A stretch of 64,000 bases of DNA from assembly GCA_047495785.1 (NCBI GenBank), contig JBLDXI010000001.1:2666001-2730000 (forward strand). The letters are read 5' to 3'. Positions within the stretch are counted from its first letter, which is position 1. Each line of letters begins with the position of its first letter. The notes under the pieces were generated by a model. It had not been told where the DNA came from. It worked only from the letters and a program-made list of their open reading frames with translations, and searched no databases. This stretch comes from Lepidodermella squamata. Taxonomy: Eukaryota > Animalia > Gastrotricha. A program made the translations under genes and the position numbers. This document shows positions 20,128 through 42,128 of this stretch, in pieces.

Positions 20128-21615
20128 ATGTTGTCCTCCTCAGCTTCATCGACAAATCATCAGGCAGATGATTCAGAAAAGCAGTACCATGGCTATAAGA
20201 TGCGCTGGTACATTCTTGGCCTGTACTTCATGATGGCATTCTGGCAGTCAGCCACATCCTCCTGCTTCGGCCCGATCGCGCCCGAAATAAATCCAGCTTT
20301 CGGCTTCACCCAACTCGATTTCGCGTTGTTCACAAATTATTTCAACATCGGATTCGTACTTCTCTTCGTCATCTTCGTTTGGCTTATCGAGAATAAGGGT
20401 CTCAGGGTGGCTGTAGTCATAACTGCCGCAATCGTAGCAATAGGATCTAGCATTCGATGCCTTCATATCGGCAACCCTGTATTCGATAAATTCTTCATCC
20501 ACCTCGGCCTGGCTATCATCGGACTTGCAAGCTCTGTTTCCTGGTTCGCCTGCACCACAGTCAGTGCAGTTTGGTTCCCGCCGCATGAGCGTAATATGGT
20601 AACTGCGATTTGCCTAACAGCGGGTAGTCTCGCGGCAACTTTCATGTTCGGTGTCGCGCCGGCTTTTCTTCACGCTTTCGAAGGCTCAGGATCACCGGAG
20701 GAAATACGAGCGGCAACTTATAAATTTCTGTATTTCCAAGCCGTTGTCGCGAATTTAATCCTTCTCGCGATTGTTTTACACTTCCCGTCCAAACCGCCGA
20801 CCCCTCCATCGCCATCAGCAGCTGTTGCTAGGATGCAGCTGAAAGACGGGGTGATCCATTTCGTGAAAAATCCGAATGCGCTACTGATGTTTGGTGCCAA
20901 TATTTGCGGCAATATTATCTCGACCTGGGCAGTTTATTTGCGTGAGTTGACGTAAACATTGCTTTATATCAAGAACCTCAAATTTCGCCCGTGAACAGCG
21001 CAAATTGTTGAAAATTACATGAGTGATACCGAAACTGGTTTGCTCGGTTTTGCTATGGGCCTAGCGACTATAGCGGCCACATATGGCAGCGCCGCGATTT
21101 TGTCTTTCCCGAGATTCGCCCCGAAATCTCGCCTAGCCGCAATTATTCTCGTATTTCTCGGTACTGCATGCCTGGTCCCGTTTGTATTCAGCCTTAACAT
21201 AACATCTCAAACATTTCTTACTCCGAGCAAAGTAAATTTTTGCATCATGAAATTTCCTGGAATTTATTTGTCTAATTAATAGCCTTTGATTTGGGCGACA
21301 ATTTTGGTTGGAATTCCGTTGGCTTCAGCGACGCAACCGGTTTGGTGGGAAATGACGTGTGACTGCATGTACCCGGTACCTGAGAGCGTAGTTGCAAGTA
21401 TTTTCAGTTTCGGCGCCTGCTTTTTTACCGTCATTTTACTCGTAATTATGATGTTCAACCAACTTGGCTTTATGTGGTTCAACTGGGTCTTGTTGGCATC
21501 TCAAGCCGCTATCGTACCTATGCTGATTTTCTACCGGCATAACGGGAAAAGAAGTACAGTCGATGAAAATGAGAACCAAATTAAACCTGATAATAATTAT
21601 CGTCCTTTGAATTAA
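20128..21615 (+). CDS. SLC49A4/DIRC2-like MFS transporter, copy 1 (introns 20942-20998, 21232-21282)
   Basis: YKMRWYIL, KGLR, IRC, SAVWFPPHER, FPSKPPTPPS and QPVWWEMTCDCMYPVPE motifs. Spliced frame is intact. Confidence 0.9.
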
Positions 21616-21837
21616 ATTTTATAATTATTATTGTTGGAAAAAATAAAGCTATGCTATTTTCACGCTGCAATCTAGGATGGTGCGTTATCTTTAGACGAGT
21701 CACGGGTACATTTTTTATCTAGAATTCCGTTTTTCGCGCCTAATGGCCCAGCCTGGAACTAAAAAGGGCAAAAAGCAAGTCGATAAAGTCTCGCATTCTG
21801 TTATACCCATTGTTTTGTTGCTGCTCATGAAATCATC

Positions 21838-23444
21838 ATGGCTGACGGGAAAAGAGTTGAAAAATTTGCGTCAGAATTTCCCGGCGACCTGCCGGAACTT
21901 AAAGTTGACCGATCGTACTCGGCAACAGCGTCGGAAAGTGGCAGCCATGCGCATTTTAAAGTCTACAGAACCCGGTGGTACATCCTGGCAATGTTCGGAA
22001 TCGTCGGAATTTTACAAAATATGGTTTACAGCACCTACAGCTCAATCGCGGTTTCAGCGAAATTAGCCCTGGAAATTACTGATACCGGTAATAAAAAAAA
22101 ATCAATTTTTTTCTCTAAAACCCATAAAATCCGTTTAGATTTTGCGTTGCTGACGAACTGGTACAACGTGAGCTTTTTGTTATCGGCCATTCCTTATATT
22201 TACATGGTCGAGGTGAAAGGGCTTCGAATGCCTATGACGACGACTATGAGCTTCATCGCTATCGGAGCGGCTGTAAGGTGTCTACACACCGGCGATAAAC
22301 AATTTGACAAAACGTTTTTACACCTCGGTCAAATTATTAATGGACTCGGAGCAGCTGTTCCGTGGTTTGCATGTACGACTATTAGTGCGGTTTGGTTTCC
22401 GCCCGATCAGAGAAATCTCGCGACAGCCATCGGCCTATTCACCGGCGGAATGGGTTCCTCTATCGCCTATATAATAGGCCCGGCCTTTCTCAACATTTAC
22501 CAGGGCTCCGGGAGTGTTGAAGAAACATACGACGCAATTTATAAGCTGTTCTACTTCGAAGCCTTGTTTTGTAACGGACTTCTATTTTTGACCATGGTTT
22601 ACTTCCCGTCGAAACCTCCAGAGCCGCCTTCGGTCACGGCGACGATTGAAAGAACGTCCTATATTGAAGGAATTCAGTTATTCGTGAAAAATCGATCAGC
22701 TTGGTTGATGTTTACAGTCTATATCCTAAACACGGTGATATCAACCTGGATTCAATACATAAGTATATTTTTTTAAATATTTTTCAATTTTTAAAATAAT
22801 TTTTTAGCTCAAATGGTCAATAGTCAAATGGATGAGACAGAGGCCGGGTGGTTGGGATTTACCATGACGGCGACTTCGATTCTTGCCGGGCCTATCCTGG
22901 CGGCTATTCTCAGCATCAAATTCTTGTCGCCTCACGCGCGACCAATCTCAATCATTTTGATACTAGCAGCTTGCGGCTGTTTCGGTCTCTTCATCGCAGC
23001 TGCTAATATTCCAGATCTGAATACTCTTCTCTTCAAACCGGTGCGCCTTTAAATTCAAAGAATTTTTAAAATTTGTTACGGAATTTTTTTATTCAGCCTT
23101 TGATCTGGGGCACCTTGGCCCCTTCGATAGCCCTAGCAACTGCTGCTCAGCCGATTTGGTGGGAAATGGCCTGCGATTGTTCGTACCCGGTCGCAGAATC
23201 TGTCGTTTCCGGCATTTTCAGCTTCGGCTCATGTGCAGTTTCGCTAGTCATTCTTTTCATTCTTATGATACCTGGCATTGGCTATTTATGGCTGAATTGG
23301 TTTATGCTAGGCTCGCAACTGCTTATTATTCCTCTTCTTCTCCTTTACCGGCACGATGGTCATCGATCTGCTGCTGATTTAGAGGGAGAAAGCCATGTTG
23401 ACTCAGACTCGCATTATCAAGACCAAATAGCTATTATCAATTGA
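21838..23444 (+). CDS. SLC49A4/DIRC2-like MFS transporter, copy 2 (introns 22088-22138, 22763-22807, 23041-23096)
   Basis: VYRTRWYIL, HLGQIINGLG, WFPPDQR, FPSKPPEPPS, EAGWLGF, QPIWWEMACDCSYP. Confidence 0.9.
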
Positions 23445-23669: not shown

Positions 23670-25432
23670 ATGGCGGAAGAGTACTGCCTAAGCGAAACCC
23701 CACACAGTCTTGTTATGGATGTCGACGACCCTGGCTATGGGATTAGCTACGACCCAACAGCCCCGCGAGTTGTACGAAAACTGACCTTGGATGTCGACTT
23801 TCAAGTTTTCCCCGAAATCGGCGTTCCATCGACGTTAATCAATGATAATCTAGAGACCATCAGCCAGCAAGATAATGACATCCACAGTGACATTCATTAC
23901 GACATTAAAGAGGCGGAACATTACAAGGTCTACAGCACAAGGTGGTACATTTTGGCGATTTTCGCTGTTGTCGGAATCTGGCAAAATTTAGTCTACAGCA
24001 CTTTTGGGCCCATTTCAGACTCAGCTACTATTGCTTTGGAACTTACACAGACAGGTGAGAAATTAAATTTTCAAATTAAAATAAAAAAAATCTCATTAAT
24101 TTCAGATCTTGCTTTGCTGCCCAACTGGTACAACATCGCTTATGTCCTAAGTGCCTTTCCTTTCGTCTACATGGTCGAGGTTAAAGGCCTCCGGATGCCA
24201 ATGACTGCAACAATGGCTTTCTGTGCTGTTGGCGGATCCATTCGATGCCTTCACACCGGTAATCGAAGCTTCGACAAAGTTTTCCTACACCTCGGCCAGC
24301 TGATCAACGGATTCGGCGCTGCTGTACCCTGGTTTGCCTGCACAACTATCAGCGCAGTTTGGTTTCCACCCGGTCAAAGGTATTTCCGGCTAAATAAACT
24401 CCTTAAAAATGATAAATTTTATATCATTTTACAGGAATTTGGCAACTGCCATAGGGCTATTCGCGAGCAATTTAGGCGTGTCTTTGGCCTTCATATTAGG
24501 CCCGTCTTTCATTCAAATTTACAAGGGCGACGGAACGGAAGAGGAGCTGTACCAAGCGATTTATAAGCTTTTCTACTTCGAGGCCATTGTTGGAAACGCG
24601 CTACTTTTCATGACGGTTTTCTACTTCCCGTCAAGGCCGCCAACTCCGCCAAGTTTTACAGCGTCACAAGCTCGATATTCCTACTCGGAAGGCTTCGCTC
24701 AGTTCGCGAAAAATGGTCCGGCTTGGTTCATTCTTGCAATTTACAGCATGAATACTAGTAAATAATTTTAAATTTAATTTTAATTTTTTTTTTTAATATC
24801 GCTGATTTTTTTCAGTTTTTCAAACTTGGAACCAATTTGTGACCATGACCGTGAAGCCTGTTATGGGCGAATTTGAAGCCGGTTGGCTGGGATTTACAAT
24901 GACAACGGTTCCAATAATAATGGGCCCAATTTTGTCAGCATTCATCGCTCTGCCAAAAATTGCCCCTTACGCTAGACAAGTCTCAATTGTACTGCTGTCA
25001 ATGGGAGTATGCCTGATCGCCCTTTTCGTCTGCTCTGTCATGATACCGTCGTTAGAGGACACCTTGCTGAGTCGCGGCATTGTTTGGGGGACAATCATCC
25101 CAGCAGTCACCCTTTCAACAACGCCGCAACCGATTTGGTGGGAAATGGCGTGCGATCGCATGTACCCGGTTCCTGAGTCGATTATTTCGGGAATTTTCAC
25201 AGTCGGCTCGTGTTCAGTATCTCTCATTTTCCTAGTCATCCTGATGTTCCCACAGCTGGGGTTTAAATGGATCAACTGGATTCTACTTTTATTTCAAGCC
25301 GCGATAGTTCCTATGCTGATAATTTACAGGCATAAAAGTAAACGAAACGCAGCCGATCAAGCGAATCGCCCGGCCGAAGTCGACGTAAACAGTCTAAATC
25401 GTTATCAAAGCCTGACAAATTCTACTAGTTAG
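23670..25432 (+). CDS. SLC49A4/DIRC2-like MFS transporter, copy 3, long acidic N-tail (introns 24055-24105, 24380-24434, 24758-24815)
   Basis: VYSTRWYIL, TFGPI, HLGQLING, FPSRPPTPPS, QPIWWEMACDRMYPVPE. Confidence 0.9.
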
Positions 25433-26224
25433 AAAAAAAATCAATATATAGTTCAAAATAAATGCAATTATTTTGGCGTAATAACTTTTTCACGCTTGTT
25501 AAATTGAAATTCGAGATAACGACGCATAATATTATCTCGATAAGTGCTGCTGCTGAAAGCTTAGAGTGTAATAAGCTGATTTTTTATGAGTTCGCACCAT
25601 ATCCTAGGGAGGGAAAAAAATAGCACTGGCCAATTTTTTCTGACTCGCCAAAGCAGATCATTAGCAGGTTTTTTTTCGTGTTATAAATGTTTTATGTATA
25701 TGGTATAATGAAAGTCGGTGATCTTTCTTTTCTTACAACACACCATAATTTTTATTTCCATAAAAAATGATTAACAGTGCCATAAAATATAACTGCATGG
25801 TAATCACAAGTGCTTAGATTTAATTACGGGCTGCGAGCGGCATGGTGGCGGTAAATATTTGGGCAACACTTTCGCCGCAGCAATAAGCTGTCATTTAGCG
25901 CATGGCTCGGCTTTTTCATCCTCGTCCGTGTAAATAAAATAATATGCGCGGAGGGAGAGAGAAGTCGCTAATTTTTTCTGGGCAAACCGGATTATTAACT
26001 TGAAAAATTCTCCACGTGGCCATGTTTTTTGCAGTGCTCATCTGCTCATTATCTATGTACAAGTCAATCCATATAGCACTACACACACGTTAATTCAAGT
26101 TCTGGGCCTGCGTATTTTCCCTAGAGAAATGCGCAGACATCTTTTCATTCATTCAACATAATACTTTTTTCCTCAGAATTTTAATCAAGTTGAACTGAGA
26201 GCAGCGGACTCGTTTTCTGCCAAG

Positions 26225-27573
26225 ATGCGCTGTTGGGTCGTTAAATTTCTAGTACTCGGCATTTTCTTCAACGCTTTTCTCACCGCAATCGCGTTAATAC
26301 CCCTCTACCTGACAAAGGAATTCGGAGTTCCTTATGCTCGAGGTTTTGATCCGGTAATTTTTTAATTTTTCAATTTTCTGTGAAAATAAGTGCGGATTTA
26401 TTTTAGGCTGATAGTTCGATCGCCTTGTCGCTGAAACCTAACACGGTTTCAAGCAATGCGGCCACGTGGGGTTCTGCTTTTATGGCGGCGGGTGTCATTA
26501 TTCTAGTCGAAGTCATTTTGGCCCTCTGCCGCCAGCGGCGCCTTTTCAAAAGCTCCAGCCATGACGGATCTGAAGCGGCGACGGAGAAATTCTGCAAACA
26601 GGAAGACGCCTCTGGGCCTGAACCGACGACGAAGCAAATTTGGCTGAATACGCTTTTCGTCATTTGGCTGTTGATTGCTCTGCTGATGACCGGTTCCGGT
26701 ATCACTGGAACTGTGACGAATCTTGGCAAGATTTTTGTTGCAAGGTACTATTATATTAAGATCGGAAAATCGGATTTTATTGGAATTAATTATTTTTATT
26801 CAAAAATCGAAAATTAAAATTAAATTTGTTTTATTTTTACTAGACATTTTTTGAATTATTTTTCTTAAATTATTTTATCATAATTTATAATTCTTGATTT
26901 TTTGCTAATTTCTTTAACTAGGCCCCGTCCCTCTTTTATGCATTTTTGCCGCCCCGACTACACCGTGCTCAACACTACTGAATGCAACAAATGCGGCAGC
27001 TATTCAAAGCCCGGCCCACATTGGCCACTGTGCCCAAGTTGTCCGTTCATCGATGGCGAAACCGCCAACGACAAGGTGTGCAACCCTGTTGCATCGATGA
27101 AACCGGGCGATATGTGGAAATCATTCCCATCGGGCCATTCTTCCTACTCCATGTACGCAACTGTCTTCCTCGCCGTCTATCTCTACAGTCGTATGCGCGA
27201 GAGTGAGCTGATATCAAAGTATAAAAAATATTTTTAACATTTTTAAGATGGCTTATGAATTTTCGATTTTAGTTATCTAGTCACCCTGCACCCGCTGGTC
27301 ATTTTCGCAACTCTCCTGTTCGGAATTTTCACTGCTTTGTCCCGTGTTTCAGACCAGCGTCATCATTTGACTGATGTGCTAGCAGGGTCTATTTTGGGCT
27401 CGATCGTTGGTCTGATCATGGGCATCACGCTGGCTTTACCTCTGCTGCAGCGAGTCAAATCTAACAAGTTATTCTACTGCAACGCCGCTAATTGCAGCCG
27501 AAACGGTCATTGTGCCAATCTGAAAAACGACCTTGAATCCACTAATCACGCCGAGAAGAATGAATCGTTCTGA
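26225..27573 (+). CDS. Phospholipid (lipid phosphate) phosphatase, PAP2/PLPP family, 4 coding exons
   Basis: All three catalytic motifs are intact: C1 KIFVAR|PRP, C2 SFPSGHSS, C3 SRVSDQRHHLTD. GFDP|ADSSI follows TM1. Confidence 0.9.
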
Positions 27574-27864: not shown

Positions 27865-27918
27865 GAAGACTGTAACCGCGAGCTGAGGTTGTCTAGACTC
27901 TAGACTTTGCACGCTAAT

Positions 27919-29505
27919 ATGGACCACGTGAGTTCTAAAAATTACCAAACCTTCTCCTCGCGGCCGTTTATATCGCTGAAAAACGATCAGATCCCAGCGA
28001 GCTACCGAACTTACCCGAGCAGATGGTACGTTCTATTTCTATACTCAAGCCTTGGAATGGCTTGCAATTTTGTATCGACAACGGTGAGCCCAATCGCCCC
28101 TCTGGCTCAGCAGGCATTCGGCCTCAATCAAACTGATATTAGCCTTCTGCCCAACTGGTTCAATTTTATGCTGATTATTCTCATTTTCCCCTACATGTAT
28201 TTCCTACAAATCAAAGGTAAGATGCGAAATGATCTTTCTCAACTCACATGAACCTTTTTTTCAAGGTCTTAGAATGCCAGTAGTAATGGGTGCATGCTTC
28301 ACTGCTGCTGGGGCGTTTGTGAGATGCTTGAATTCAAGCAACTCCAACCGGATGTTCGACAAGGCTACGCTTCATTTAGGTCAAATTATCAATGGAATCG
28401 GCGCACCTATTCTATGGTTCGCCTGCACGAAGTTGTCCGTTGTTTGGTTCCCACCCAGCGAGAGAATGGTCAGCACTACCATAGCCCTGTTATCGGGACC
28501 TGTCGGCGTCAGTTTAAGCTTCCTAATCGCCCCATACACTGTAGACAGCCTATCGAAAAATTTGGCAGTGAAAAACGGCGGCAATGTTGAAGATTACTAT
28601 GCAGATGCGATTCGTCAGCTTTTCTACGGGGTTGCGTTGTTATGCATTGTGTTATGCACGATGACTGTAGTCTACTTCCCATCTGCCCCTCCTACACCTC
28701 CGAGTTACACTTCTACAACAAAGCGGCATAACTTCATTCAGGGTTTCAAACAGTTCGGGAAAAGTCTGGACGCTTGGCTTATCTTAATTCTCAGCAGCGT
28801 TACAGGAGCCGTCTTGGGTATGTAATATGCCATCATGGATATAACGTTAATCGAAGTTTTACAGCCGGCTGGACTCTTTTTCTCTCAATCACCCTGAACA
28901 ACATCCTTGACAATGTGCAAGCGGGTTGGCTCGGGTTTGCTATGACTGTTACTTCTTTATTTTCTGGACCGGTAAGTCCTAAGAAAGGAGTGAGAAGCTC
29001 TCTTGCATTTGCTTCTTTCCTGAAGATCACGACTTTCACATCGCAGTGGTGGATTCACCGCTGCCCTCGAATCATTTGCGCTTGGATACTCGCAGTTGGA
29101 GCGGCTTGTACAGTTCTTTTCCTTATTGCTTCCGTCTTCATTCACTCATGGCTAACTGCGCCATTTTGCTGGGCAGTTCTGGTTACAACATCATTTTTCG
29201 TATCTGCAAATCAGCCAGTTTGGTGGGAAATGGCCTGTGAAGCGGTATATCCCGTTCCTGAGGAGATAGTTGCAGGGTGTTTTGCGCTCGGCTCAACATT
29301 AGTGTCTTCAACTTTTCTGATACTCAACGCGATTCCGTCGCTTGGCGCCGAATGGATCAATTGGTGCTTGGCAATTAGCGAGTGCCTCTGTGTTCCGATA
29401 ATTTTCTTCTACAGCGGAGCACGAAGACGTTTCGCTGATGATCAACTCGCCACTGCCAGATTGTTGCCTTCCGGGTCGTTGCGAGAAGAGCAGTCTCAAG
29501 CATGA
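27919..29505 (+). CDS. SLC49A4/DIRC2-like MFS transporter, copy 4 (introns 28217-28265, 28818-28864, 28972-29025)
   Basis: YPSRWYVL, WFPPSER, FPSAPPTPPS, QPVWWEMACEAVYPVPE. Confidence 0.9.
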
Positions 29506-29922: not shown

Positions 29923-31646
29923 ATGGAAGCTCTGAAAGCAACAAGGAACTCAATAGACGATGTAGTCGATTCAGAGCATTCAGGCCACTACAGGGTCTAT
30001 CGTCGAAGATGGTAACGAGCAGCTTTGAGATACGAAGTGTTATATGTGTATTGTTTATCCAAAGGTACGTGCTATTCGTCTTTTCAGCCCTTGGAACGGT
30101 GCAGAACATGACATTCAGCACCTTCAGCCCCATTTCGCAATTCACTGAGAAGGCACTCGGATTTGAACGATGGGAGATCGCGTTACTGGCTAATTGGAGC
30201 AATATTACTTTCTTGCTTGCGATTTTCCCTCACATGTGGCTCGTTCAGACCAAAGGTACAGATTCTATCAGCTACGCGATGATTTTTTCAGATTCATTTC
30301 TTTCCAGGACTTCGATTCCCGGTATTGATGAGTGCTGGACTGGTGGTCAGTATAATATTTTCCAACTATCCTTGCTCGTTGCTTTTACAGTTCCCGTTAA
30401 CAGGCCCTTGGATCCTTAATTCGATGCGTCAGCACCGGAGACTACAATTACCCAAGTCCTTTTTTCGATCGAGTGATGCTTCATCTCGGCCAAGCCTTGA
30501 ATGGCTTCGCTGCGCCTGTCCTTGGTTTCGCCTGCACGAAAATTTCAGCGGTGTGGTTTCCACCTTCGGAGCGAGCGATGAGCACGTCGATAGGATTAGT
30601 GGCTGGAAGCCTAGGCACTGCTATCAGCTTTGTAATTGGCCCGTACGCCATCACAGGATTGGCTACAAAGTGGTCAGGCGGGTTGAAACCCTTGCCGGAT
30701 GAATTGGCGGCAGCAATTTATTATTTGCTGTACGCCGAATTCATCGCATGTGTGATTTTATTTGCAATGACTTTAGCCTACTTCCCGTCAGAGCCGCCAA
30801 CACCACCGTGTTACACTGCAAGATGTGCCAGACTCGCATTTGGCAAAGGAATCGTTGAATTTGTGAAAACTAGGGATGCATGGGTTATTTTGGTTCTATA
30901 CAGCGTTTCCAGCGGAATTTTTTGTAAGCTATGGTAATTTTCGCATTATTGCTCTTGAATCTTCTTTTACTAAACCTTAAAGATGGTTGGACACAATTTC
31001 TCTCCATAAACCTCAAAGGAGTTATGGGGTCGATTGAGGCAGGGTGGCTCGGCTTCACACTAACGATCGCTTCAATCATATCCGGGCCGGTACTGCCATT
31101 CTTAAATTAATTTGGATTGTTATTACAGATTTAATTCTTCAGGCCACATCGGCAACGTCCAACTATTGGCTATATGGTCGTTTTCCAAAGCTAATTTGTG
31201 CCGGACTGTTGTTCATTGGTGCGGTTCCGGTGACAGTTTTCTTAGTTGCTAACCTCATGCCATCGATGCTCACGCCAGCAATATCTTGGATAACTTTAAT
31301 ACCCGGTGCATTTTTCACGAGTGCTTGTCAGCCAATCTGGTGGGAGATGGCCTGTGAAGCCGTTTATCCGGTACCAGAAGAAATAGTAGCCGGAATATTC
31401 TCTTTAGGAAATACTGTGATAACACTGGTATTTTTTGCTGTGTATTCGTTCCCGTCGCTAGGGACGTCATGGGCAACGTGGTGTTTAGCCATCAGTCAAA
31501 TTATTTGCGTACCATTAATATTTCTATACAGCGGAGCAACACGTCGCCTTGCCGAGGATAATGCTGGTAAATGTATTTTAGACGACGAACCTAGCGATTT
31601 TACTCCGGACAAAGAACAGGAGACGTCAGCGAGCATCGCCCATTAG
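29923..31646 (+). CDS. SLC49A4/DIRC2-like MFS transporter, copy 5 (5 introns)
   Basis: ATG at 29923 (MEALK...VYRRRW|YVL). HLGQALNG, WFPPSER, FPSEPPTPP, QPIWWEMACEAVYP. Introns start at 30012, 30256, 30346, 30924, 31090. Confidence 0.9.
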
Positions 31647-32075: not shown

Positions 32076-33656
32076 ATGGTCGATCGTGGAATGGAGGCGA
32101 GTAATTGCTACGAAACTTATAGCTCCAGATGGTATTAATCCTTATCTGCTATAATTATGTTTATTAATATTTGTCCCGACTACAGGTATGTCTTAGCTGT
32201 CTTCGCCATTCTCGGCATTGCCAACAATATGGTATCTACAACGTTCAGCCCTATTGCAAATCTTGCCGAAGAAGGACTCAACATGACTCAGACCGAAATT
32301 AGCATGTTGGCAAATTGGTACAATGTCATGTTCATAGTAAGCGTCTTTCCCTATATGTGGCTCCTCCAAATTAGAGGTTAGAATTGTATCCTCTTATTGA
32401 CTTTTTGGCTTAACCTTCATACCCTTTGAATAAGGTCTTCGAACACCCATCGTAAGCGCAGCCATTTTCATGGCTATAGGCAGCTTCATCCGATGCATTA
32501 ACACTAGCGGTCAAAATGTGGCACTCGACCGAGCGTTGCTGCACATCGGGCAAGCTGTCAATGGTATAGCTTCCTCCGTCTTATGGTTCGCTTGTACTAA
32601 AATATCCGCTGTCTGGTTTCCTCCTCATGAGCGAGCCCTGAGCACTGCTGTTGGGATGCTGTGTGGTGAACTCGGCATATCTGTTAGCTTCCTTGTCGGG
32701 CCGATAACTGTCAAAAGTTTAGCCGAGCGATGGACTACCGATGAAGAAAATGACGCAGTCAGTAAGCACTACGGACAGGCTATATCTTACCTGCTGTTTG
32801 CGGAAAGTGTCGTTTGCTTCCTCCTATGTGCAGTTGTAGTAATTTACTTCCCATCTGAACCACCTTCACCACCAAGCTTCACTGCTAAAACTGAAAGGCT
32901 CGACTTTGCTAACGGCCTCTCTCATTTCGTCAAAAATCGCGATGCCTGGGTGATTTTTGTTTTATTCAGCGTTTCATCTGCTGCATTTGGTAAGAAATGC
33001 CGCCCAAATATTGCAAAAGATTAAGCTATATCTTTTTGATAGCTGGTTGGACTCAGTTTCTTGCAATAACAATGAAAGGTATTATTGATGACGTCGAAGC
33101 TGGCTGGCTTGGATTCACGATGACGATAGCTTGCGTTGTATCTGGTCCAATATTTTCATTCACTGCCTATCGCTGGATAGAATCTCGGCATAACAAAGTT
33201 GTATGCGCCGGAATCCTCTTAACTGGTGCATCTATGACTGTCATTTTCCTAATTGCAAACGTATTCGTGAAATCTATGCTTTCTTCGGCACTCTGTTGGT
33301 CTACACTGATCATCGGCGTATTTTTCGTCAGCGCTTGTCAGCCTCTTTGGTGGGAAATGGCCTGCGAGGCTGCATATCCGATATCGGAACAAACCGTTGC
33401 TGGAATTTTCGCATTGGGTGGTACGAGTATAAGTCTGGTCATTTTTTCCATCTTCGCTATCCCATCGGCGGGGACTGAGTGGTCGACTTGGTTTCTGGCG
33501 ATTTCTGAGACAGCATGCGTTCCTTTGATATTTCTCTACTCTGGTAAGTGCCGGCGAACAGCAGAGGATCGCTGGGCCCGAATGCACTTGGCTGAGACCC
33601 AGCACAGTGCGGAGTGCGTGAGCCTCCTTGAAACAACCGATCTCAATTCGGAATGA
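32076..33656 (+). CDS. SLC49A4/DIRC2-like MFS transporter, copy 6 (3 introns)
   Basis: MVDRG...YSSRW|YVL, WFPPHER, FPSEPPSPPS, QPLWWEMACEAAYP. Confidence 0.9.
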
Positions 33657-33949
33657 ATCAGGCTAAATGTAACCTGTCATTGGTCCTTTTTTCTTTTCGC
33701 TTTTCTCGTGAATTAGCTATAAAGAAATAAATGAAGTAACTTCATGCGAACAGACAGTGGTATTCAACATTTTTATCGCAGCATAACCATACTTCGAAAA
33801 GTAAACATGAAAATGACAGAAAGCATTGATCGCGTTTAACATACGTAAAATTGTTTGCTCGAGCGCGTTTTGTGCTTACAGTGGATCATTAATTTGTTAG
33901 AAATTGTTTTAATCAGCCGCTAGTTTTTTGTGAAAAAGCCCAGTTGAAC

Positions 33950-35715
33950 ATGAAGATGGCCGATTACGATGAGGAAACACTCTATCTAGCGACAAGCAGG
34001 GATGAACGTTACAAGTCGTACCCAGCAAGATGGTTTAATTTTTTTCAATAATTTCTCCACTTCAAAATATAATAACCTCTATCAACCTTTCTAATCAGGT
34101 ATGTTCTCACCGTCTATGTGATATTGGGGATAGCCAACAACCTGATCTATTCCACATTCACTTCAATCGCTGAATACGCTGAGAGAGGCTTAAATATACA
34201 CCAGACTGAACACAGCTTGATTAGTAACTGGTACAACATCGGCTTCCTTGTCGGCGTCTTTCCCTATATGCGTCTGCTACAAATACGAGGTAAAGGGCTG
34301 TTGTCTCAATTAACTCAAGTTATAATCATGGCTGTCATTATTTTGTTAGGCATTCGGCCTGCTGTAATTTCTGGAGCTGCTTTTGTTGTAAATTTTCATG
34401 TTTTTCGTTCAAACCAGAGTAATATTCTCATCAATCTAAGGCATCTGGAGCTGTCATTCGATCTATAAACACAAACGGGAAAATTTTGATTTTTGACAGC
34501 GCAATGCTTCATCTTGGGCATGCTATCAACGGCCTTGCAGCATCGATTTTCGCTTTCGCTTGCACCAAAATATCCGCTGTTTGGTTCCCACCTTCGGAAC
34601 GTCCCTTAAGCACTGCGTTAGGCCTGGTTTCTGGTAATACGGGAATAGCGCTGAGCTTTGTGATAGGCCCCTACGCCATACGAGCGTGGGTTGAGGGAAC
34701 TGCGAAGAACCAAGAGGCATACGCCACAGCAATATATTACCTAATGTATGCTGAAGGCGTTGCCTGTTTGCTGCTGTTCGCCTTGACAATTGTATATTTC
34801 CCCAATGAGCCGCCATCGCCACCCAGTTACACAGCATCGAGTGATCGCTACTCATTCTTTGCCGGGCTTCTGGAATTCAGCAAGTCGAAAAATGCCTGGG
34901 TATTGCTTGCCATCTACAGTTTATCCTCCACAGCATTCTGTGAGTTTTATTTCTTTGGCCACAAAACTATACGAAAATTGATGTTCAGCATCTTGGACGC
35001 AGTTTATTGCAATAACGATGAAGGGGAAATTATCACCGGTGGAGGCAGGATGGTTAGGTTTGTTTGAATCTCGTGTTGCCCTCTACAAATTCGTACATCT
35101 CCATATTCCACAGGTTTCGCTCTTGTCAACGCAATGACTTTGTCAGGGCCGGTAAGTTGATGAGTGTTACCTTGAATAGTGTGTTCCCGTGTGATTAACT
35201 AGATTTTCTCGATAAAAGCTGATCGTTGGATGGAGTCTTACGCAAAAATAGTAAGCGTCTTGACACTATTGGCAGGGGCTTTGATGGTGTCCCTCATGTT
35301 AAGCGGCGAAGTGCTAAATATTGCCCAATTAAGCAGTCGCGAATTCATTTGGATTTCACTAAATATCGGCGCGTTTCTCGTTTGCGCGTGTCAACCTATT
35401 TGGTGGGAAATGGCCTGCGAGGCAGTTTATCCTGTGCCTGAAGAAATTGTTGCTGGAATTTTCGCTCTCGGAAGCACTATCATAGCCGTAATTTTTGCGG
35501 CCGTTTTCGGCATTACATCTCTCGGCACTCAATGGACAACGTGGTTTTTGTTAATCAGCATACTTTGCTGCGTGCCATTGGTTTACCTGTATAATGGTTC
35601 GTATCGGAGAACAGCGGAGGATCGAGCTAATGAGCATCTCGATGCAGAATCCCCCAAAGAGAATAAAAATAACGCATCTGATGAGTTGGAACAGCTTATT
35701 GAAAATGTGGAATGA
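33950..35715 (+). CDS. SLC49A4/DIRC2-like MFS transporter, copy 7 (6 introns)
   Basis: MKMADY...YPARW|YVL, WFPPSERP, FPNEPPSPPS, QPIWWEMACEAVYP. Confidence 0.9.
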
Positions 35716-36216
35716 AAAATCCGTTTGAACTGTATTCCCCTTGTCATTCTTTAAATTTTTCAATAATTATGATGATATGAGCTAATTTAAAGTTTGAAAT
35801 GGTTAATTTCAATAAAATCGTGGAAGTGCTAAAAACCGTTGAAATCGTTGGGAAATTGCGAGCCCCTTTAAGTGGATGCTTCAGACTCCGAAGCAACATG
35901 AATTTCCTTAGACTATCCGGTCATCCAATAATATTCACACTCGTTAAGCATTTAGTCTTTAGTCAAGTCGTCAGCACTTAAAGGAGCCTACTCGCATAAT
36001 AGCATTGCAGCGCCGCCAGACTCGGACTCAGCCATCAGGCTTGAGTCGCAGCCTCCAAAAAGTAAACACAGAAAGGGAAATTCATTGATCCATACTACGA
36101 TGCTTTACACGACTCCTCTTTCTTCATCATTTTGGAGATGCTTTAGTAAGCTCGTCCAATCTTGAATTTTCTGCTCGGAAATCTAAAATTTTAAGCGAAA
36201 ACATACACGCTGCATC

Positions 36217-37906
36217 ATGTCAGAATTAGCTATTGGTGATGAATGCGTATTTTCAGAAAACATATCCAGCGATGGAGGACAATACAGATCATATGCAACG
36301 CGATGGTCAGATATTTTCTATAGCTCAGCCTGTCATAATTTTTCCTCTAACTCGCACAGGTACATCCTCGCTCTCTTCTCAACATTGGGTATAGCGAACA
36401 ATCTAGTATACAGCACGTTTACTTCAATCGCTGAACACGCGGAGAAGGGTTATAACATGAAACAAACTGAGCAGAGTTTGGTTAGCAACTGGTATAACAT
36501 TGGTTTTTTCATCGGAGTATTTCCGTACGTGTGGCTTTTGCAAAGAAGAGGTAAAATTGAGCCCTGCTTTCTCTGATACAAAGCTTGCATTTATATATGT
36601 CATATCTAGGAATCCGTCCGGCAGTTGTTTCAGGGGCTGCTTTTGTGGTATGCTAACTTTTTATGACCAATTGTCTTAAAAGTGTTCGAATTTAAACAGG
36701 CTTCGGGAGCCGTCATCCGATCAATCAATACAGGAGGCTCGAACGAGATTTTCGACAACACAATGCTCCATCTAGGCCATGCAATTAACGGCTTGGCAGC
36801 TTCGGTCTACTGGTTTGCCTGTACCAAAATATCAGCTGTATGGTTTCCTCGCTCAGAGCGGCCATTGAGCACTTCTATTGGGTTGGCAACTGGAAACTAC
36901 GGCATAGCATTAAGCTTCGTGATAGGTCCCTACGCCGTGGATGCCTGGGTGGCCGGAACTTTGAAAGATCAAGCGGCTTACGCAACGGCGATTCATTACC
37001 TCTTGTATGTCGAAAGTATAGTATGCGTCCTACTGTTCGCTCTGGTCGTTTTGTATTATCCAAATGAGCCCCCAACGCCACCCAGCTACACGGCCTCGGC
37101 AGTACGTTACACGTTTTGGCAAGGTCTAGTCGCAATCACCCGATCCAAAAACGCTTGGGTCATGCTGATTGTTTACAGCTTCACCGCAACAGCATTCTGT
37201 AAGATATAGCCACATAACTTTTTATTGCAGCAATCACGTTGTTAATCATAGCTTCTTGGACTCAGTTCATAGCTATCACCATGAAGGACAGATTATCGGC
37301 CGTAGAGGCTGGTTGGCTCGGATTTGCTCTTATCAACGCCATGAATATTGCTGGACCGGTACGTCTTTTCCCTTGCTGAATTTGAAATTAATCGTGGGAA
37401 TATCTCGACAGGTATTCTCAATATGCGCAGATCGATGGATTGAGTCTTACGGAAAACTAGTGAGCGCTACGACACTTTTCATCGGTGGGGCGATGATTTC
37501 TTTGTTACTTATTGGGGATGTTTTTGACATCCCTTTCATGATCTCCAGTGAACTCTGCTGGATTTCCCTTGTCAGTGGTGCTTTCTTCGTTTGCGCTTGT
37601 CAGCCAATTTGGTGGGAAATGGCCTGCGAGGCAGTTTATCCCGTTTCTGAGGAAATTGTTGCGGGAACTTTCGCCCTTGGAGCTACCGTTGTTGCGATGG
37701 CCTTCGCTGCTGTTTTTGCAATTCCATCGTTTGGTACTCAATGGACAACGTGGTTCCTGGTTATTAGCGTCTTCGTTTGTGTGCCTTTGGTATATCTCTA
37801 CACTGGAACATGTCGAAGAACAGCGGAAGATCGGGCAAAAGAAAAATCCAAGCCATCGGACGGCGGGTCTGATGAGCTTGACAGCTTTTTCGACGATAGC
37901 CTCTAA
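36217..37906 (+). CDS. SLC49A4/DIRC2-like MFS transporter, copy 8 (5 introns; closest to copy 7)
   Basis: YATRW|YIL, WFPRSERP, YPNEPPTPPS, QPIWWEMACEAVYP. Confidence 0.9.
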
Positions 37907-38270
37907 TCTTCAGCTTTTAGCTGCTCAAATCTTTGATTCTTTACTCAATCACAAAATTGTCGCTAGCTATCAATTTCGGATTGCTAGTGATAGAACGTTG
38001 ACTGAAGCAAATGTTGTCCCAGTGATGCGACCTGTCAGTACCTTACTCGTAGCTCGTAGGTTTATTCTAAATTGGAAAACACCCAACCATAAGATTGCTG
38101 TCAGCATGCCAAACACCTTTTGGCTATTGCATCTCCTGAGAAAAATATTCCACACCCCATTTCCGACTTTATACTTTCCTCTTACTGTTTCGCGAGATAA
38201 AACGTGCTTAAAAGTCAGGCAATTCATTTTTTTTAAATTAGATCGAAAATAATTTTTCACAAGTGGTGTT

Positions 38271-39941
38271 ATGGAAGATAATGAAGATAAGGAGCAGATT
38301 CTTTCACTTGTTGAATCCGATGAAGAGAAAAAAGCATACAAGTCATACCCGGCAAGATGGTATTTAGACGAAGCTAATTGACAATCCCATTTAGAGTTAA
38401 ATTTTACATTTACAGGTATGTTCTAATGGTATATTCTCTGGTAGGAATGGCTAACAACCTGGTTTTTGCAACCTTCAGCACAATCGCGCACTTCGCTGAA
38501 ATCGGTCTTAATATGACTAAGTCGGAAATTAGTGCATTAAGTAATTGGTTCAACGTCATGTTCCTAATTGGAGTAGTCCCTTACTTATGGCTTCTCCACA
38601 ACAAAGGTACTTTTTGATCGCTATGAATGCGAAAATTTTATTGCAAGCCTATTCTAATCAGGTCTCCGGCCATCTATACTCCTCGCATCAGCTTTCATCG
38701 TAAGATTAACATTCAGTCGACTGAACATAGAAAATATTATCTCCAACATCAGGCTGTTGGTGCTGCTACTCGATGCATCCATAGTAACGGAAGAAATCCT
38801 TTGTTCGATACGATTATGGTGCATTTAGGCACGGCTATCAATGGTATGGCATCACCTGTTTTATGGTTCGCCAGCACCAAAATATCTGCTGTGTGGTTTC
38901 CTCCCAAGCAACGTGCTTTTAGCACCTCAATAGGGATGACAGCCAGTTATTTCGGGGTCGCATTAGCTTTCGTCATTGGTCCATATGCTGTAACTGCATT
39001 ATTGCAACATTCATCAGCAAAGGACCCACAAGACCACGCAGGAGCGATACATCAGCTTTTGTACGTTGAGGCCCTCGCTTGTTTGGCCTTACTCGCCGTA
39101 GTTGCAGCTTATTTCCCATCCGCCCCGCCAACGCCCCCGAGCTATACAGCTTCGTGTGATCGCAAGGGCGTCTTCGAAGGTTTCGCAACGTTTGCGAAAT
39201 CCAAAGACGCATGGGTAATTTTTATTTTGAGCAGCGTAGGTCCCGTCGCAATATGTGAGCCAAGTTGATAAGTTATAAGAAGCTTACTACAAATTGATTA
39301 TTTATTTTTAGTTGCTTGGACTAATTTCCTTGCGATAACGATGAAAGATTCAATGTCGGAAATTGAGATTGGATGGCTTGGATTTTCTCTGACTATTGCC
39401 ATGGCTATTTCAGGACCGGTTAGTTAACTTTACTCTTGATCAGAAGTAAACTAATTACTCTGAGCAGATTTTCTCCCTAGGAGCGCATAAGTGGATGGAA
39501 TCTCATGCAAAAATAGTCACAGTGACAAGCATGGCTATGGGTGCTAACATGGCAGCTGTGTTCCTCGTTGCCCACACTTACTTCCACGAGGCAATTAGTC
39601 CGACAATTATTTGGTTATCTCTGATCAGTTGTTCATTTCTTGTTTACTCTTGCCAACCACTTTGGTGGGAAATGGCATGCGAGGCAGTTTACCCGGTATC
39701 CGAGGAAACAGTCGCAAGCATTTTATCGGTGGGAACTATTGTTTTCTCAATGATATTTTTCTTTGCTTATGGTATACCTTGCGTCGGAACTGAATGGACT
39801 TCCTGGTCGCTGGTGATTTGCGAATACGCCTGTGTTCCATTGATCTTTCTGTACCGCGGAACCCATCGCAGGTTGGCAGAAGATCGAACGAATGATAATT
39901 CAAATGGTGGATACACCCAGGTTCTGAATAAAGAGGGCTAA
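38271..39941 (+). CDS. SLC49A4/DIRC2-like MFS transporter, copy 9 (5 introns)
   Basis: MEDNEDKEQIL...YPARW|YVL, WFPPKQR, FPSAPPTPPS, QPLWWEMACEAVYP. Confidence 0.9.
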
Positions 39942-40380
39942 ATATTTGTCAATGGCTTAAGCTGCTATTCGTACATTCATTGCTGGAAATTCCAATGAAG
40001 TATAGGTATAACTCAGTGGAATTCAAAAAGCTCACGGGAGTGAAGTAGAGTGCGAGGTCAGCTTTTATGCTCAAGCCAATTCTAACTGCTTCAGACTTGC
40101 TCTAGATGTATTTTCCCAATGATCTTTTGCTCTACAGGTCCTGGTAATTCAGAACATTTCGGTGGCTAGTGCATTCTATCATGAGCGGTATTGAAGATTT
40201 TATCAGTCGTCTCTCCAAAACACTATCAAGGACACGCTGTGAAATGATAAGAGACATAAGCCATTCCCTTAATCTTGGTAGAGGAGTGGAAAGGGACTTC
40301 TTCTACTTAGGGCGTCACCAGCAAAGATAATCACGTATTAGTCTCTTCGATTCCGATTGGTATTTTTGGCTGATAAAATT

Positions 40381-42128
40381 ATGACCGAGGAAAAAGCAAT
40401 AATGAACAACGATGGCGTTGGATACAGTAGTGACCATAAAATCCCAAACCAACTGGTCAATGCAGAAGTTAACTCTGGAAAAGGAGTTTTGGATCATAGG
40501 GTTCTGGAAACATCATCCTACTCTACCTACTGGAGTAGATGGTATGGTAGAAATATTACAACCCCTGTCGGAAAATATAATATTTTGCATTAGGTATGTC
40601 CTGATTTTGTACGCAGTCCTCGGAGTCGCCAACAACATGGTTTACAGTACGATAAGCCCGATTGCCAATTACGCTGAACCTGCCCTCGGTTTAACGCAAA
40701 CTGACATCAGCTTACTTGCAAACTGGTACAACATAATGTTCTGTGTCGGAGTGTTTCCGTACATGTATTTGGTTCAAAAGAAAGGATTAAGGATGCCAAT
40801 AGCTTCAGGAGCTGCTTTTACTGTGAGCAAAATTATTTTCTACTGCCAACAAGGCCCTTTGACATCTAATATTTAGGCCATTGGGGCTTTCGTTCGATGT
40901 TTGAATACTCACGGCCAATGTCCTAGTTTCGATACGGCAATGCTACATCTCGGTCAAGCTATTAATGGTCTAGCTTCGTCCATCCTTTGGTTCGCCTGCA
41001 CGAAACTTTCAGCCGTCTGGTTTCCACCCCACGAGAGAGCTATAAGCACCTCAATTGGGCTAGTCACTGGAGGCAGTGGGGTAGCCATAAGTTTCGTTGT
41101 CGGGCCAAATGTCGTCGAAGGTTTAGCTTCGAAATGGTCGGGAAATGACCCATCTCAAGAAGACTACGCAAATGCTATTAGATTTCTTCTCTACGGCGAA
41201 TGCATTGTCTGTTGCTTCCTATGTTTCCTGACGCTGATTTACTTCCCATCCGAGCCGCCAACACCTCCGTGTTACAGCGCTACGTCAGATAGATTCGAAT
41301 TCATCAAAGGACTGAAACAATTCTCCAAAAGTAAAGACGCTTGGCTCATTTTCGCACTTTACAGCGTTTCTGGAGCAGTGCTAGGTGATTTCGTCAACTC
41401 TGTTTCCTATTTAATCACTCATCGCGCTGATTTGTTTAGGGGGCTGGACGCAATTTCTCGCAATCACCGTCAAAGATGTCATGGGCGATATCGAATCAGG
41501 ATGGCTCGGCTGCGCGATTACAATTGCTTCTGTGATTTCGGGGCCGGTAACTATCTTTTGATAAATAATTTACTTTTTCTATCTTCAGCATTTTCTTTGA
41601 CAGCTGCTGTCCCTAACAACCAAGTTCTGGATTGAACGACATGCAAAAACTGTTTGCACTGCCATGATATTCATTGGTGCCAGCTGTATGACAGTTTTCT
41701 GGGTGTCAGAGGCGTTTGTCCGCTCTATGCTTTCAGCTGGGCTTTGTTGGGGAACGCTAGTACCTGGGGCTTTATTCGTCACGGCTTGCCAGCCGATGTG
41801 GTGGGAGATGGCATGCGAAGCAGCTTACCCAGTACCCGAGCAAATCGTGGCTGGAATTTTCGCGCTGGGAAGCACGGCTTTCAATGTCGTTTTCTTTCTA
41901 CTCTACTCTTTTCCGCAACTTGGAACTCAGTGGGCTAATTGGTGTCTGGCTATCAGCTTGATGGGCTGCGTGCCCATAATTTTCTTCTACAGCGGGCAAG
42001 CGCGACGGCTAGCCGATGATTGCAGAGCCGAAGAACAGCGACAAGCCGCGATTAATCAGAGCGGAAATTACTCCAAACTGAACGACTCGTGTTATCCAAA
42101 TGCTTTTCAAGAAAATGTCCAACCATAA
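40381..42128 (+). CDS. SLC49A4/DIRC2-like MFS transporter, copy 10 (4 introns)
   Basis: YWSRW|YVL, KGLR, WFPPHER, FPSEPPTPP, QPMWWEMACEAAYPVPE. Confidence 0.9.

What the first reader, a model, noticed from the sequence alone, without database searches (positions are those of the whole stretch)
20128..42128. Ten-gene tandem radiation of SLC49A4/DIRC2-like transporters, all apparently intact
Seen: ten same-strand paralogues in 22 kb, each reconstructable without internal stops, strongly diverged outside core motifs, and sharing the signature QP[IVLM]WWEM[AT]C[ED]xxYP (human DIRC2 has roughly VPIFFELFVETVYP). Known: human has one SLC49A4, a lysosomal MFS exporter; the related FLVCR1/2 carry choline and ethanolamine. 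Inference: an old, selectively retained, lineage-specific battery of endolysosomal or gut small-amine transporters, for example for intracellular digestion or symbiont-derived nutrients.
Basis: partly seen in the sequence, partly recalled or inferred. Interest (0 to 1): 0.8.

Follow-up and report, generated by a model that had tools for sequence, protein, structure and literature searches.

The report
Ten tandem SLC49A4-like transporter genes
A small, gene-dense invertebrate genome carries ten neighbouring, intact and long-diverged genes for membrane transporters related to the human lysosomal vitamin-B6 exporter DIRC2/SLC49A4; the expansion is real and confined to this lineage but fairly ordinary, and the cargo is unknown.

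Summary
Ten + strand genes lie between 20128 and 42128. Each has the 14-residue motif QP[IVLM]WWEM[AT]C[ED]xxYP once. Each gives an open spliced model of 459-532 aa with GT-AG introns of 45-66 nt. A conserved PAP2 gene splits the array into 3 + 7 copies.

Spliced RNA-derived contigs confirm all four introns of copy 10 and one intron of copy 8. Copy 9 is barely covered, and copies 1-7 could not be tested.

Amino-acid identity between copies is 30-69%. Synonymous sites are saturated in every pair, and tree-wide dN/dS is about 0.12. All ten score 345-425 bits against a profile of outside SLC49A4 homologues. The array is therefore old and kept by selection.

Every named relative found, from sponge to fish, is an SLC49A4/DIRC2 homologue. 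FLVCR1/2 score less than half as many bits.

The ten belong to a 17-member clade seen otherwise only in metagenome contigs of a relative, whose matching locus has three copies. In this clade the TM1 tryptophan that binds substrate in FLVCR is Y, F or S, and the TM10 pair FF/FY has become an invariant WW.

No evidence supports a lysosomal, gut, small-amine or symbiont role. The case is ordinary; only the altered pocket residues are of some interest.

The parts
20128..21615 (+). Copy g1 (proximal group A), 459 aa. Exons 20128-20941, 20999-21231, 21283-21615.
   Evidence: Spliced model. Pfam MFS_1 E=3.8e-14 on exon 1. Motif at 21343. 345 bits against the outgroup SLC49A4 profile.
21838..23444 (+). 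Copy g2 (group A), 484 aa. Exons 21838-22087, 22139-22762, 22808-23040, 23097-23444.
   Evidence: Pfam MFS_1 E=3.4e-15. Motif at 23157. 381 bits.
23670..25432 (+). Copy g3 (group A), 532 aa from the first ATG. Exons 23670-24054, 24106-24379, 24435-24757, 24816-25432. It is the orthologue of the relative's gene A (63% identity).
   Evidence: Sister of LA with support 98/96. Motif at 25136.
26162..27573 (+). PAP2-family (lipid phosphate phosphatase-like) gene that splits the array. It is not an MFS copy.
   Evidence: tblastn of the relative's PAP2 ORFs hits 26162-26362 and 26935-27540. Pfam PAP2 E=1.7e-8. ORF 26425-26817 matches the relative's PAP2 gene region. The relative has the same position between its MFS genes.
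27919..29505 (+). Copy g4 (distal group B), 478 aa. Exons 27919-28216, 28266-28817, 28865-28971, 29026-29505.
   Evidence: Motif at 29221. 362 bits.
29923..31646 (+). Copy g5 (group B), 482 aa, six exons. Exons 29923-30011, 30065-30255, 30308-30345, 30404-30923, 30983-31089, 31143-31646.
   Evidence: Motif at 31338. 425 bits.
32076..33656 (+). Copy g6 (group B), 471 aa. Exons 32076-32131, 32186-32376, 32435-32989, 33043-33656.
   Evidence: Motif at 33348. 397 bits.
33950..35715 (+). Copy g7 (group B), 476 aa, seven exons. Exons 33950-34032, 34099-34289, 34350-34387, 34441-34939, 34989-35057, 35114-35151, 35203-35715.
   Evidence: Motif at 35401. Nearest paralogue is g8 (69% identity).
36217..37906 (+). 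Copy g8 (group B), 472 aa, six exons. Exons 36217-36305, 36360-36550, 36610-36647, 36700-37198, 37252-37358, 37412-37906. Transcribed.
   Evidence: An X1 spliced contig skips 37199-37251 (GT..AG), and X1 contigs lie over most of the gene.
38271..39941 (+). Copy g9 (group B), 466 aa, six exons. Exons 38271-38359, 38416-38606, 38662-38699, 38753-39254, 39312-39418, 39468-39941.
   Evidence: Motif at 39663. X1 cover is only patchy and low, so expression is not shown.
40381..42128 (+). Copy g10 (group B), 509 aa from the first ATG. Exons 40381-40541, 40594-40822, 40877-41384, 41440-41546, 41604-42128. Transcribed and spliced as modelled.
   Evidence: X1 contigs join 40541/40594, 40822/40877, 41384/41440 and 41546/41604. 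It is closest to the relative's gene C (64-65% identity).

Best explanation
The region is a tandem array of ten separate, functional genes. Each encodes a twelve-helix major-facilitator (MFS) transporter of the SLC49 family, on the SLC49A4/DIRC2 side of it.

History. The array grew by repeated local duplication on both sides of a PAP2 gene, giving three proximal group A copies and seven distal group B copies. At least part of the group B duplication happened before this lineage split from the relative known from metagenome contigs. That relative now has one A and two B copies at the same locus. Since then every copy has evolved on its own for so long that synonymous sites are saturated, while the proteins stayed under purifying selection.

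Mechanism (inferred). The proteins work by the usual MFS rocker-switch.

The substrate site differs from canonical SLC49A4/FLVCR. The TM1 tryptophan is replaced by Y, F or S, and the TM10 aromatic pair has become an invariant Trp-Trp. The TM1, TM7 and TM11 pocket positions differ between copies.

The most likely reading is therefore a battery of paralogous small-solute carriers with diverged substrate range and/or expression. The substrate and the membrane are unknown.
For: Shown:
- Ten motif hits, all on the + strand.
- Ten open spliced models. Five introns of copies g8 and g10 are confirmed by spliced RNA-derived contigs.
- Pfam MFS_1 on exon ORFs.
- Clade member P0004 aligns end to end with FLVCR2 (residues 23-456 against 71-505, E=1e-24).
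- The Atlas's own structural model of the relative's gene C ORF matches a DIRC2 cluster at TM 0.83.
- Every named relative is SLC49A4/DIRC2.
- phmmer bits against SLC49A4 homologues are 94-231 for g1-g10, 129-225 for P0004 and 71-132 for the g2 ORF. Against FLVCR2 and FLVCR1, P0004 scores 91 and 63; against FLVCR2, the g2 ORF scores 33.
- pS is at least 0.75 in all pairs listed, while pN is 0.19-0.37.
- The GY+F3X4+G4 codon model gives omega 0.119.
- All ten score 345-425 bits against a profile of 95 outside homologues.
- The careful tree has a 17-row clade with support 100/99, an A clade at 100/100 and a B clade at 100/100.
- The AU test rejects a single clade of the seven window B copies, p=0.014.
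- The locus is syntenic: laminin, Nup85, Aa_trans, a small ORF, then MFS, PAP2, MFS.
- Pocket and gate residues: read against PMC11168923.

Inferred: transport activity, rocker-switch gating, and divergence in substrate.
Against: - Transcription is shown for only two copies (g8, g10).
- The X1 run held 0.27 of the sampled words of 32100-42099. That is about what g8 and g10 alone would give, so g6 and g7 may be poorly represented in that run. This is a weak inference.
- Omega is one tree-wide value. No per-branch test was run, so recent relaxation of a single copy is not excluded.
- Pocket positions were assigned by sequence alignment to FLVCR2, not from a structure of these proteins.
- SLC49A3 (MFSD7) was not available for comparison, and no tree included FLVCR, so placement inside SLC49A4 rests on names and bit scores.
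- The AU hypothesis was framed after the tree had been seen.
- Introns 9.2, 73.1 and 86.0 are shared by window B copies but absent from the relative's B and C genes. That pattern would be simpler if the B copies had radiated after the split.
Confidence: 0.82

Rival explanations
1. The substrate is the same for all copies and only the expression differs. On this reading the copies were kept by regulatory subfunctionalisation or dosage (different tissues, stages or conditions), and the pocket differences are neutral drift at tolerant sites.
For: Each gene has its own 222-501 bp upstream spacer. In one RNA-derived run, contig cover differs between g8, g9 and g10. The gate residues and the WW pair are invariant. 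The same genome is noted to hold another tandem array of nine diverged transporter genes (an unchecked note).
Against: The position equivalent to the substrate-coordinating FLVCR2 W102 is W in 80 of 95 outside homologues. Among the ten copies it varies between Y, F and S. Identity as low as 30% goes far beyond what regulatory partition needs.
Confidence: 0.3
2. Several copies are unexpressed relics or are on their way to becoming pseudogenes. The array would then look intact only because decay has not yet produced stops.
For: Copy g9 is hardly covered in X1. The run's word share suggests little of g6 and g7. Copies g1-g7 are untested.
Against: Synonymous sites are saturated even in the youngest pair (g7/g8: pS 0.76, pN 0.19). 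Terminal branches are 0.9-2.9 substitutions per codon. Over that much time a neutral 1.4-kb reading frame with 2-6 introns would have gained stops, frameshifts or broken splice sites. None of the ten has one, and all score as full-length family members.
Confidence: 0.07
3. The genes belong to a different, already multi-copy MFS family, or to the FLVCR branch (SLC49A1/2/3), rather than to SLC49A4. The DIRC2 likeness would then be superficial.
For: The only solved relatives are FLVCR1/2. SLC49A3 was not compared. No tree included FLVCR or SLC49A3. The clade lacks the TM1 Trp and the N-terminal dileucine of human DIRC2.
Against: All named proteins among the nearest 150 of 1.84 billion representatives and among the 35 profile hits are SLC49A4/DIRC2 homologues, including a true fish SLC49A4 and amphioxus and ascidian DIRC2. 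Bit scores to these are 2-3 times those to FLVCR1/2.
Confidence: 0.06
4. The proteins are not carriers but transporter-derived sensors or receptors (transceptors). On this reading they diversified as chemosensory families do.
For: The pattern is a tandem, strongly diverged, lineage-specific array. The canonical substrate-binding Trp is lost.
Against: The residues of the alternating-access gate network (E424, E428, Y431 and E435 equivalents) are conserved in all ten. That is expected for proteins that still cycle. There are no added signalling domains, and the tails are short.
Confidence: 0.05

Closest known systems
[quoted passage not shown]
   Same: These are the nearest named relatives of every copy. 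Length is similar, about 460-530 aa, and the Pfam domain is MFS_1. The TM10-loop-TM11 motif P-x-aromatic-aromatic-E-x-x-x-E-x-x-Y-P-x-x-E is shared: fish SLC49A4 has VPIFFELFIETVYPVPE where the copies have QPxWWEMxCExxYPxxE.
   Different: Identity is only about 30-35%. There are ten copies here, plus clade members at other loci in the relative, instead of one. The TM1 Trp, present in 84% of outside homologues, is Y, F or S. FF or FY has become WW. None of the ten N-termini has a [DE]xxxL[LI] motif. Substrate and membrane are unknown.
FLVCR1 / FLVCR2 (SLC49A1/2), choline and ethanolamine transporters with solved structures (8qcx, 8qcs, 8ubw and others; PMC11168923)
   Same: They belong to the same SLC49 family and align end to end with a clade member at E=1e-24. 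The gate residues E424, E428, Y431 and E435 are conserved.
   Different: Similarity is much lower: 63-91 bits against 129-225 bits for SLC49A4 homologues with the same query. The choline-coordinating W102, Q191 and Q447 are not conserved, and F324/Y325 only partly. Choline or ethanolamine transport therefore cannot be carried over.
SLC49A multigene family of C. elegans (eight homologues, some proposed as haem exporters; bioRxiv 10.64898/2026.07.31.742071)
   Same: It shows that SLC49 genes can multiply in invertebrates and take on distinct roles.
   Different: It is a different lineage. I did not compare the sequences. The worm genes were discussed there as SLC49A3-like haem carriers, not as a WW-motif SLC49A4-like clade, and no ten-gene tandem array is described in the passages I read.
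Orthologous locus in metagenome contigs L001-L004 (ENA ERZ23486764, ERZ23486787, ERZ27333047, ERZ27332993)
   Same: Gene order is the same: laminin, Nup85, Aa_trans, small ORF, MFS, PAP2, MFS. The WW motif and the introns at alignment columns 261.1, 297.0 and 347.0 are also shared.
   Different: It has only three MFS genes (A, B, C) with 1-2 introns each. Maelstrom follows them, but no match to Maelstrom was found in the window. Four more clade members (P0004, P0005, P0153, P0007) lie at three other loci in the same samples.

Membership tests
Major facilitator superfamily (Pfam MFS_1, PF07690) | Significant match to the MFS_1 profile | tested here: met
   Exon ORFs of g1, g2 and g10 score 49-56 bits, above the 33.4-bit cutoff. 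Other exon pieces are too short to pass alone. Relatives P0001-P0007 carry PF07690.
Major facilitator superfamily (Pfam MFS_1, PF07690) | Two six-helix halves (twelve TM helices) over the full length | tested here: inconclusive
   Clade member P0004 aligns over residues 23-456 with residues 71-505 of twelve-helix FLVCR2. The Atlas's own model of the relative's gene C ORF matches DIRC2 and MFS clusters at TM 0.7-0.83. My crude hydropathy count on the ten models gave 5-10 peaks and is not reliable. The joined window models were not folded.
SLC49 family | Best solved-structure and named relatives are SLC49 members | tested here: met
   The only PDB hits are FLVCR1/2. All named database relatives are SLC49A4/DIRC2.
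SLC49 family | Conserved cytoplasmic gate network of TM10, loop and TM11 (FLVCR2 E424, E428, Y431, E435) | tested here: met
   E, E/D, Y and E are present in all ten copies. The same residues are present in 76-91 of 95 outside homologues. Their roles are taken from PMC11168923.
SLC49A4 / DIRC2 subfamily | Closer to SLC49A4 than to SLC49A1/2/3 | tested here: inconclusive
   The copies are clearly closer to SLC49A4 than to FLVCR1/2. P0004 scores 129-225 bits against 63-91, and the g2 ORF 71-132 against 33. SLC49A3 was not available. No tree included FLVCR or SLC49A3, so none could be rooted with them.
SLC49A4 / DIRC2 subfamily | One-to-one orthology with the single-copy animal gene | tested here: not met
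   The ten copies and seven relatives form their own 17-member clade (100/99) beside the other animals' SLC49A4 genes, not a single orthologue.
SLC49A4 / DIRC2 subfamily | N-terminal acidic dileucine lysosomal sorting motif (human E10-R-Q-P-L-L15) | tested here: not met
   None of the ten N-termini contains [DE]xxxL[LIVM]. Only g6 and g7 have such a motif, in their C-tails. The human motif is from PMC9719028. This feature is established for human DIRC2 only.
SLC49A4 / DIRC2 subfamily | TM1 tryptophan at the centre of the cavity (FLVCR2 W102 equivalent) | tested here: not met
   It is W in 80 of 95 outside homologues. In the copies it is Y in g2, g3, g7, g8 and g10, F in g5 and g9, and S in g1, g4 and g6.
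FLVCR-type choline/ethanolamine transporter | Choline-coordinating residues W102, Q191, Y325 and Q447 (FLVCR2 numbering) | tested here: not met
   The equivalents are Y/F/S, A/S, F/I/L and C/T/I. The residue roles are from PMC11168923.
H+-coupled pyridoxine export (the DIRC2 function) | Measured pH-dependent pyridoxine transport | not testable with these tools
   This needs heterologous expression and uptake assays.

The most novel reading that the evidence does not exclude
The WW clade may be a rebuilt offshoot of SLC49A4 in which the aromatic substrate-contact site has moved. The nearly universal TM1 Trp was given up, and an invariant Trp-Trp pair arose on the cavity-facing cytoplasmic half of TM10. 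The ten copies differ at the TM1 (Y, F or S), TM7 and TM11 pocket positions. On this reading they form a natural specificity series, carrying different small organic cations or vitamin-like solutes. That would make the substrate determinants of the poorly understood SLC49A4 branch directly testable.
Probability: 0.25. Interest if true: 0.5.

Novelty: new member of a known kind. Interest (0 to 1): 0.3.

Why it matters
SLC49A4/DIRC2 is among the less understood human solute carriers. One study reports lysosomal pyridoxine export, and a recent preprint links it to haem and red-cell formation.

This array offers ten long-retained paralogues that keep the gating machinery but vary at the predicted substrate-contact positions. 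That makes it a ready-made comparison set for asking which residues set specificity in this branch. It also points to some nutrient or metabolite traffic that matters unusually to this animal lineage.

Beyond that, it is a well-documented example of an ordinary process: tandem duplication followed by long-term retention, with intron turnover. It is not a new kind of system.

Tried and rejected
1. An eleventh copy in the 4-kb gap. ORF 26425-26817 had a weak sub-threshold MFS hit, but it matches the relative's PAP2 gene region. Rejected.
2. Pairwise Ka/Ks by Nei-Gojobori. Ks cannot be defined for nearly all pairs because pS is at least 0.75. I replaced it with a maximum-likelihood codon model.
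3. First spliced models built on the relative's 489-aa ORF. That ORF reads through two introns and produced false 28-35 nt introns. I replaced them with models built on the RNA-confirmed copy 10 and a 40-nt minimum intron.
4. Hydropathy count of TM helices. The result was unreliable, 5-10 peaks.
5. Single-sequence word search with a copy-2 exon. It found only one relative and said little about the family.
6. Identifying the organism through the neighbouring ABCB8 gene. The best hit is a metagenome protein at 75%, followed by fish at 46%, so this stays unresolved. Other notes of this scan say 'probably a rotifer'. I did not test that. No rotifer protein appeared among the relatives I named.
7. 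A single post-speciation burst for the seven distal copies. The AU test rejects it at p=0.014. The same test for the three proximal copies does not reject it (p=0.14).
8. Literature search for a described SLC49A4/DIRC2 expansion. Nothing specific was found, apart from the eight C. elegans SLC49A homologues.
9. Lysosomal sorting motifs. The N-termini have none, and the C-tails have only scattered YxxΦ or dileucine-like matches.
10. Structure prediction and fold search were not run. The joined window proteins have no reference, and the sequence alignment to FLVCR2 together with the Atlas model already showed the fold.

Full report
**What is there**

The ORF map shows short same-strand ORFs in changing frames, the pattern of a eukaryotic gene cluster with small introns.

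I wrote a protein-to-genome spliced aligner. The relative's 489-aa ORF proved a poor template because it reads through introns. I then rebuilt all models on copy 10, whose structure RNA confirms.

Each copy gives one open model from an ATG to a stop, 459-532 aa long, with 2-6 GT-AG introns of 45-66 nt. Spacers between stop and next ATG are 222-501 bp. The exception is the 2486 bp between copies 3 and 4, which hold a PAP2-family gene. tblastn finds no further MFS match elsewhere in the window.

**Transcription**

One search for sequencing runs gave two holders. Contigs of run X1, laid on 36180-42150, skip exactly the modelled introns of copy 10: 40542-40593, 40823-40876, 41385-41439 and 41547-41603. 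They also skip one intron of copy 8, 37199-37251. The third copy-10 joint is GT-AG once its 2-nt ambiguity is resolved. X1 is therefore RNA-derived, and copies 8 and 10 are transcribed and spliced as modelled.

Copy 9 has only patchy, low cover. Run X2 covers the whole stretch without joints and behaves as DNA.

**Family**

- Exon ORFs hit Pfam MFS_1.
- The only solved relatives are FLVCR2 and FLVCR1.
- I ran an exhaustive HMMER search of 1.84 billion representatives. The query was the relative's gene C ORF, given by reference, because the joined window models have none. It gave 99 hits below 1e-30.
- I looked up 30 of the top 150 across the tree. Every one with a name is an SLC49A4/DIRC2 homologue or an unnamed MFS protein. 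They come from sponges, a cnidarian, molluscs, a nemertean, a bryozoan, crustaceans, a sea star, amphioxus, an ascidian and a fish.
- A profile word search gave the same picture and no further close relatives.
- With the same query and program, bits to SLC49A4 homologues are two to three times those to FLVCR1/2. P0004 scores 129-225 against 63-91, and the copy-2 ORF 71-132 against 33.
- Atlas neighbours by features and by structure include DIRC2 clusters, with TM 0.83.

SLC49A3 was not available, and no tree included FLVCR. The SLC49A4 assignment is therefore well supported but not formally rooted.

**Age and selection**

Pairwise identity is 30-69%. The proportion of synonymous differences is at least 0.75 in every pair listed, including the closest pair (copies 7 and 8: pN 0.19, pS 0.76). 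Pairwise Ks is thus saturated.

A codon model (GY+F3X4+G4) on 422 ungapped codons of the ten copies plus the relative's three genes gives omega 0.119. Terminal branches are 0.9-2.9 substitutions per codon.

All ten models score 345-425 bits against a profile built from 95 outside homologues. That is the same range as the relative's genes. No copy shows a stop, a frameshift or a non-canonical splice site. Over this much divergence, that argues strongly for selection on each copy.

**History**

Metagenome contigs L001-L004 carry the orthologous locus of a fairly distant relative. The order there is laminin, Nup85, Aa_trans and a small ORF, then MFS-A, PAP2, MFS-B, MFS-C and Maelstrom. The upstream genes are syntenic with the window.

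A careful maximum-likelihood tree puts the ten copies, these three genes and four further metagenome proteins in one clade, with support 100/99. P0004, P0005, P0153 and P0007 lie at three other loci in the same samples.

Inside that clade:
- Group A is (g1,(g2,(g3,A))).
- Group B is (g5,((g10,(C,(g4,B))),(g6,(g9,(g7,g8))))).

Holding the seven window B copies together costs 25 log-likelihood units (AU p=0.014). So part of the B expansion probably predates the split, and the relative lost copies. For the three A copies the same test is not significant (p=0.14).

Intron positions complicate this. The window B copies share introns at alignment columns 9.2, 73.1 and 86.0, which the relative's B and C genes lack. 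All B-type genes share 261.1 and 297.0. Group A has a different set: 46.1, 142.2, 259.1 or 268.1, and 347.0. Either the relative lost the 5' introns, or the tree is misled by unequal rates. I leave this open.

**What the motif is**

The printed HMMER alignment to FLVCR2 reproduces the paper's numbering for A283, R200, S203, Y431, E435 and Q447. With it, the motif maps to the cytoplasmic half of TM10, the TM10-TM11 loop and the start of TM11.

In FLVCR2, Y431 and E435 belong to the intracellular gate, and TM10 and TM11 line the inward-open cavity (PMC11168923). The E424, E428, Y431 and E435 equivalents are kept in all ten copies and in 76-91 of 95 outside homologues.

What marks the clade is the aromatic pair. 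Outside homologues have F, Y or L there, with W in 0 and 1 of 95. P0007 has LW, and all 15 crown members have WW.

The TM1 tryptophan that contacts choline in FLVCR (W102) is W in 80 of 95 outside homologues, including fish SLC49A4. It is never W in the clade. It is Y in copies 2, 3, 7, 8 and 10, F in 5 and 9, and S in 1, 4 and 6. The alignment there is gapless, anchored by RWY(I/V)L and by the GPI-type segment just after the column.

The equivalents of Q191, Y325 and Q447 are A/S, F/I/L and C/T/I. The FLVCR choline site is thus not conserved, and predicted pocket positions differ between copies.

**Localisation**

Human DIRC2 reaches lysosomes through an N-terminal E-x-x-x-L-L motif (PMC9719028). 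None of the ten N-termini has such a motif. A few C-tails have dileucine-like or YxxΦ matches. Nothing here speaks for or against a lysosomal, gut or symbiosis role.

**Verdict**

The physiological part is unsupported.

Multi-copy SLC49 families exist elsewhere; eight homologues are reported in C. elegans. This genome is noted to hold at least one other tandem array of diverged transporter genes (unchecked). The expansion is therefore an ordinary kind of event.

The features worth following up are the loss of the TM1 Trp, the fixed WW pair, and the pocket variation among ten long-retained copies.

**Limits and rules followed**

- The joined spliced proteins were built and analysed only in scripts, from the stored window file.
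- They were never sent to a search, fold or look-up tool. Those tools received window exons by reference or proteins returned by the tools.
- The organism is not identified. Other notes of this scan suggest a rotifer. I did not test that.

Noticed in passing
window 26162-27573 (+): A PAP2-family (lipid phosphate phosphatase-like) gene sits inside the transporter array between copies 3 and 4. The relative has it at the same place, so the array grew on both sides of it.
   Followed up: partly
window 20128-42128; L001 10001-16462: Intron turnover is marked. The window's distal copies share three 5' introns, including a 38-nt micro-exon, that the relative's B and C genes lack. Proximal and distal groups share no exact intron position. 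The clade members at other loci (P0004, P0005, P0007) were called as single intronless ORFs. This conflicts mildly with the protein tree.
   Followed up: partly
window 3538-19693 (+): The upstream genes are syntenic with the relative: a laminin chain (3538-9166), Nup85 (10272-13113), an Aa_trans amino-acid transporter with larger introns (13247-18423), and a conserved small ORF (19331-19693, 70% identity, no Pfam family).
   Followed up: partly
window 42200-64000: The downstream neighbours differ from the relative; no Maelstrom match was found. They include an ABCB8-like mitochondrial ABC half-transporter (46265-48301), a mitochondrial carrier fragment (48731-49138), a PDZ-domain ORF on the minus strand (54174-54704), TANGO2 (61425-62291) and MRPS30/PDCD9 (62996-63799). 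TMEM70 lies at 1625-2404.
   Followed up: partly
L005 10001-13324; L006 10001-11275; L007 10001-11377: The same metagenome samples hold four more members of the clade at three unrelated loci. One locus has a tandem pair with the WW motif. The family is therefore dispersed as well as tandem in this lineage, and the window's genome probably has further copies elsewhere.
   Followed up: partly
window 36804-40408: Many low-depth X1 contigs show 'opposite strands' joints about 100 nt apart within copies 8 and 9. These look like fold-back artefacts of contig assembly at low coverage rather than biology.
   Followed up: no
window 36180-42150: Both public runs differ from the window at many sites (contigs are mostly 95-99% alike, with small indels in spacers). 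The window's source is thus a different strain or haplotype from either run.
   Followed up: no
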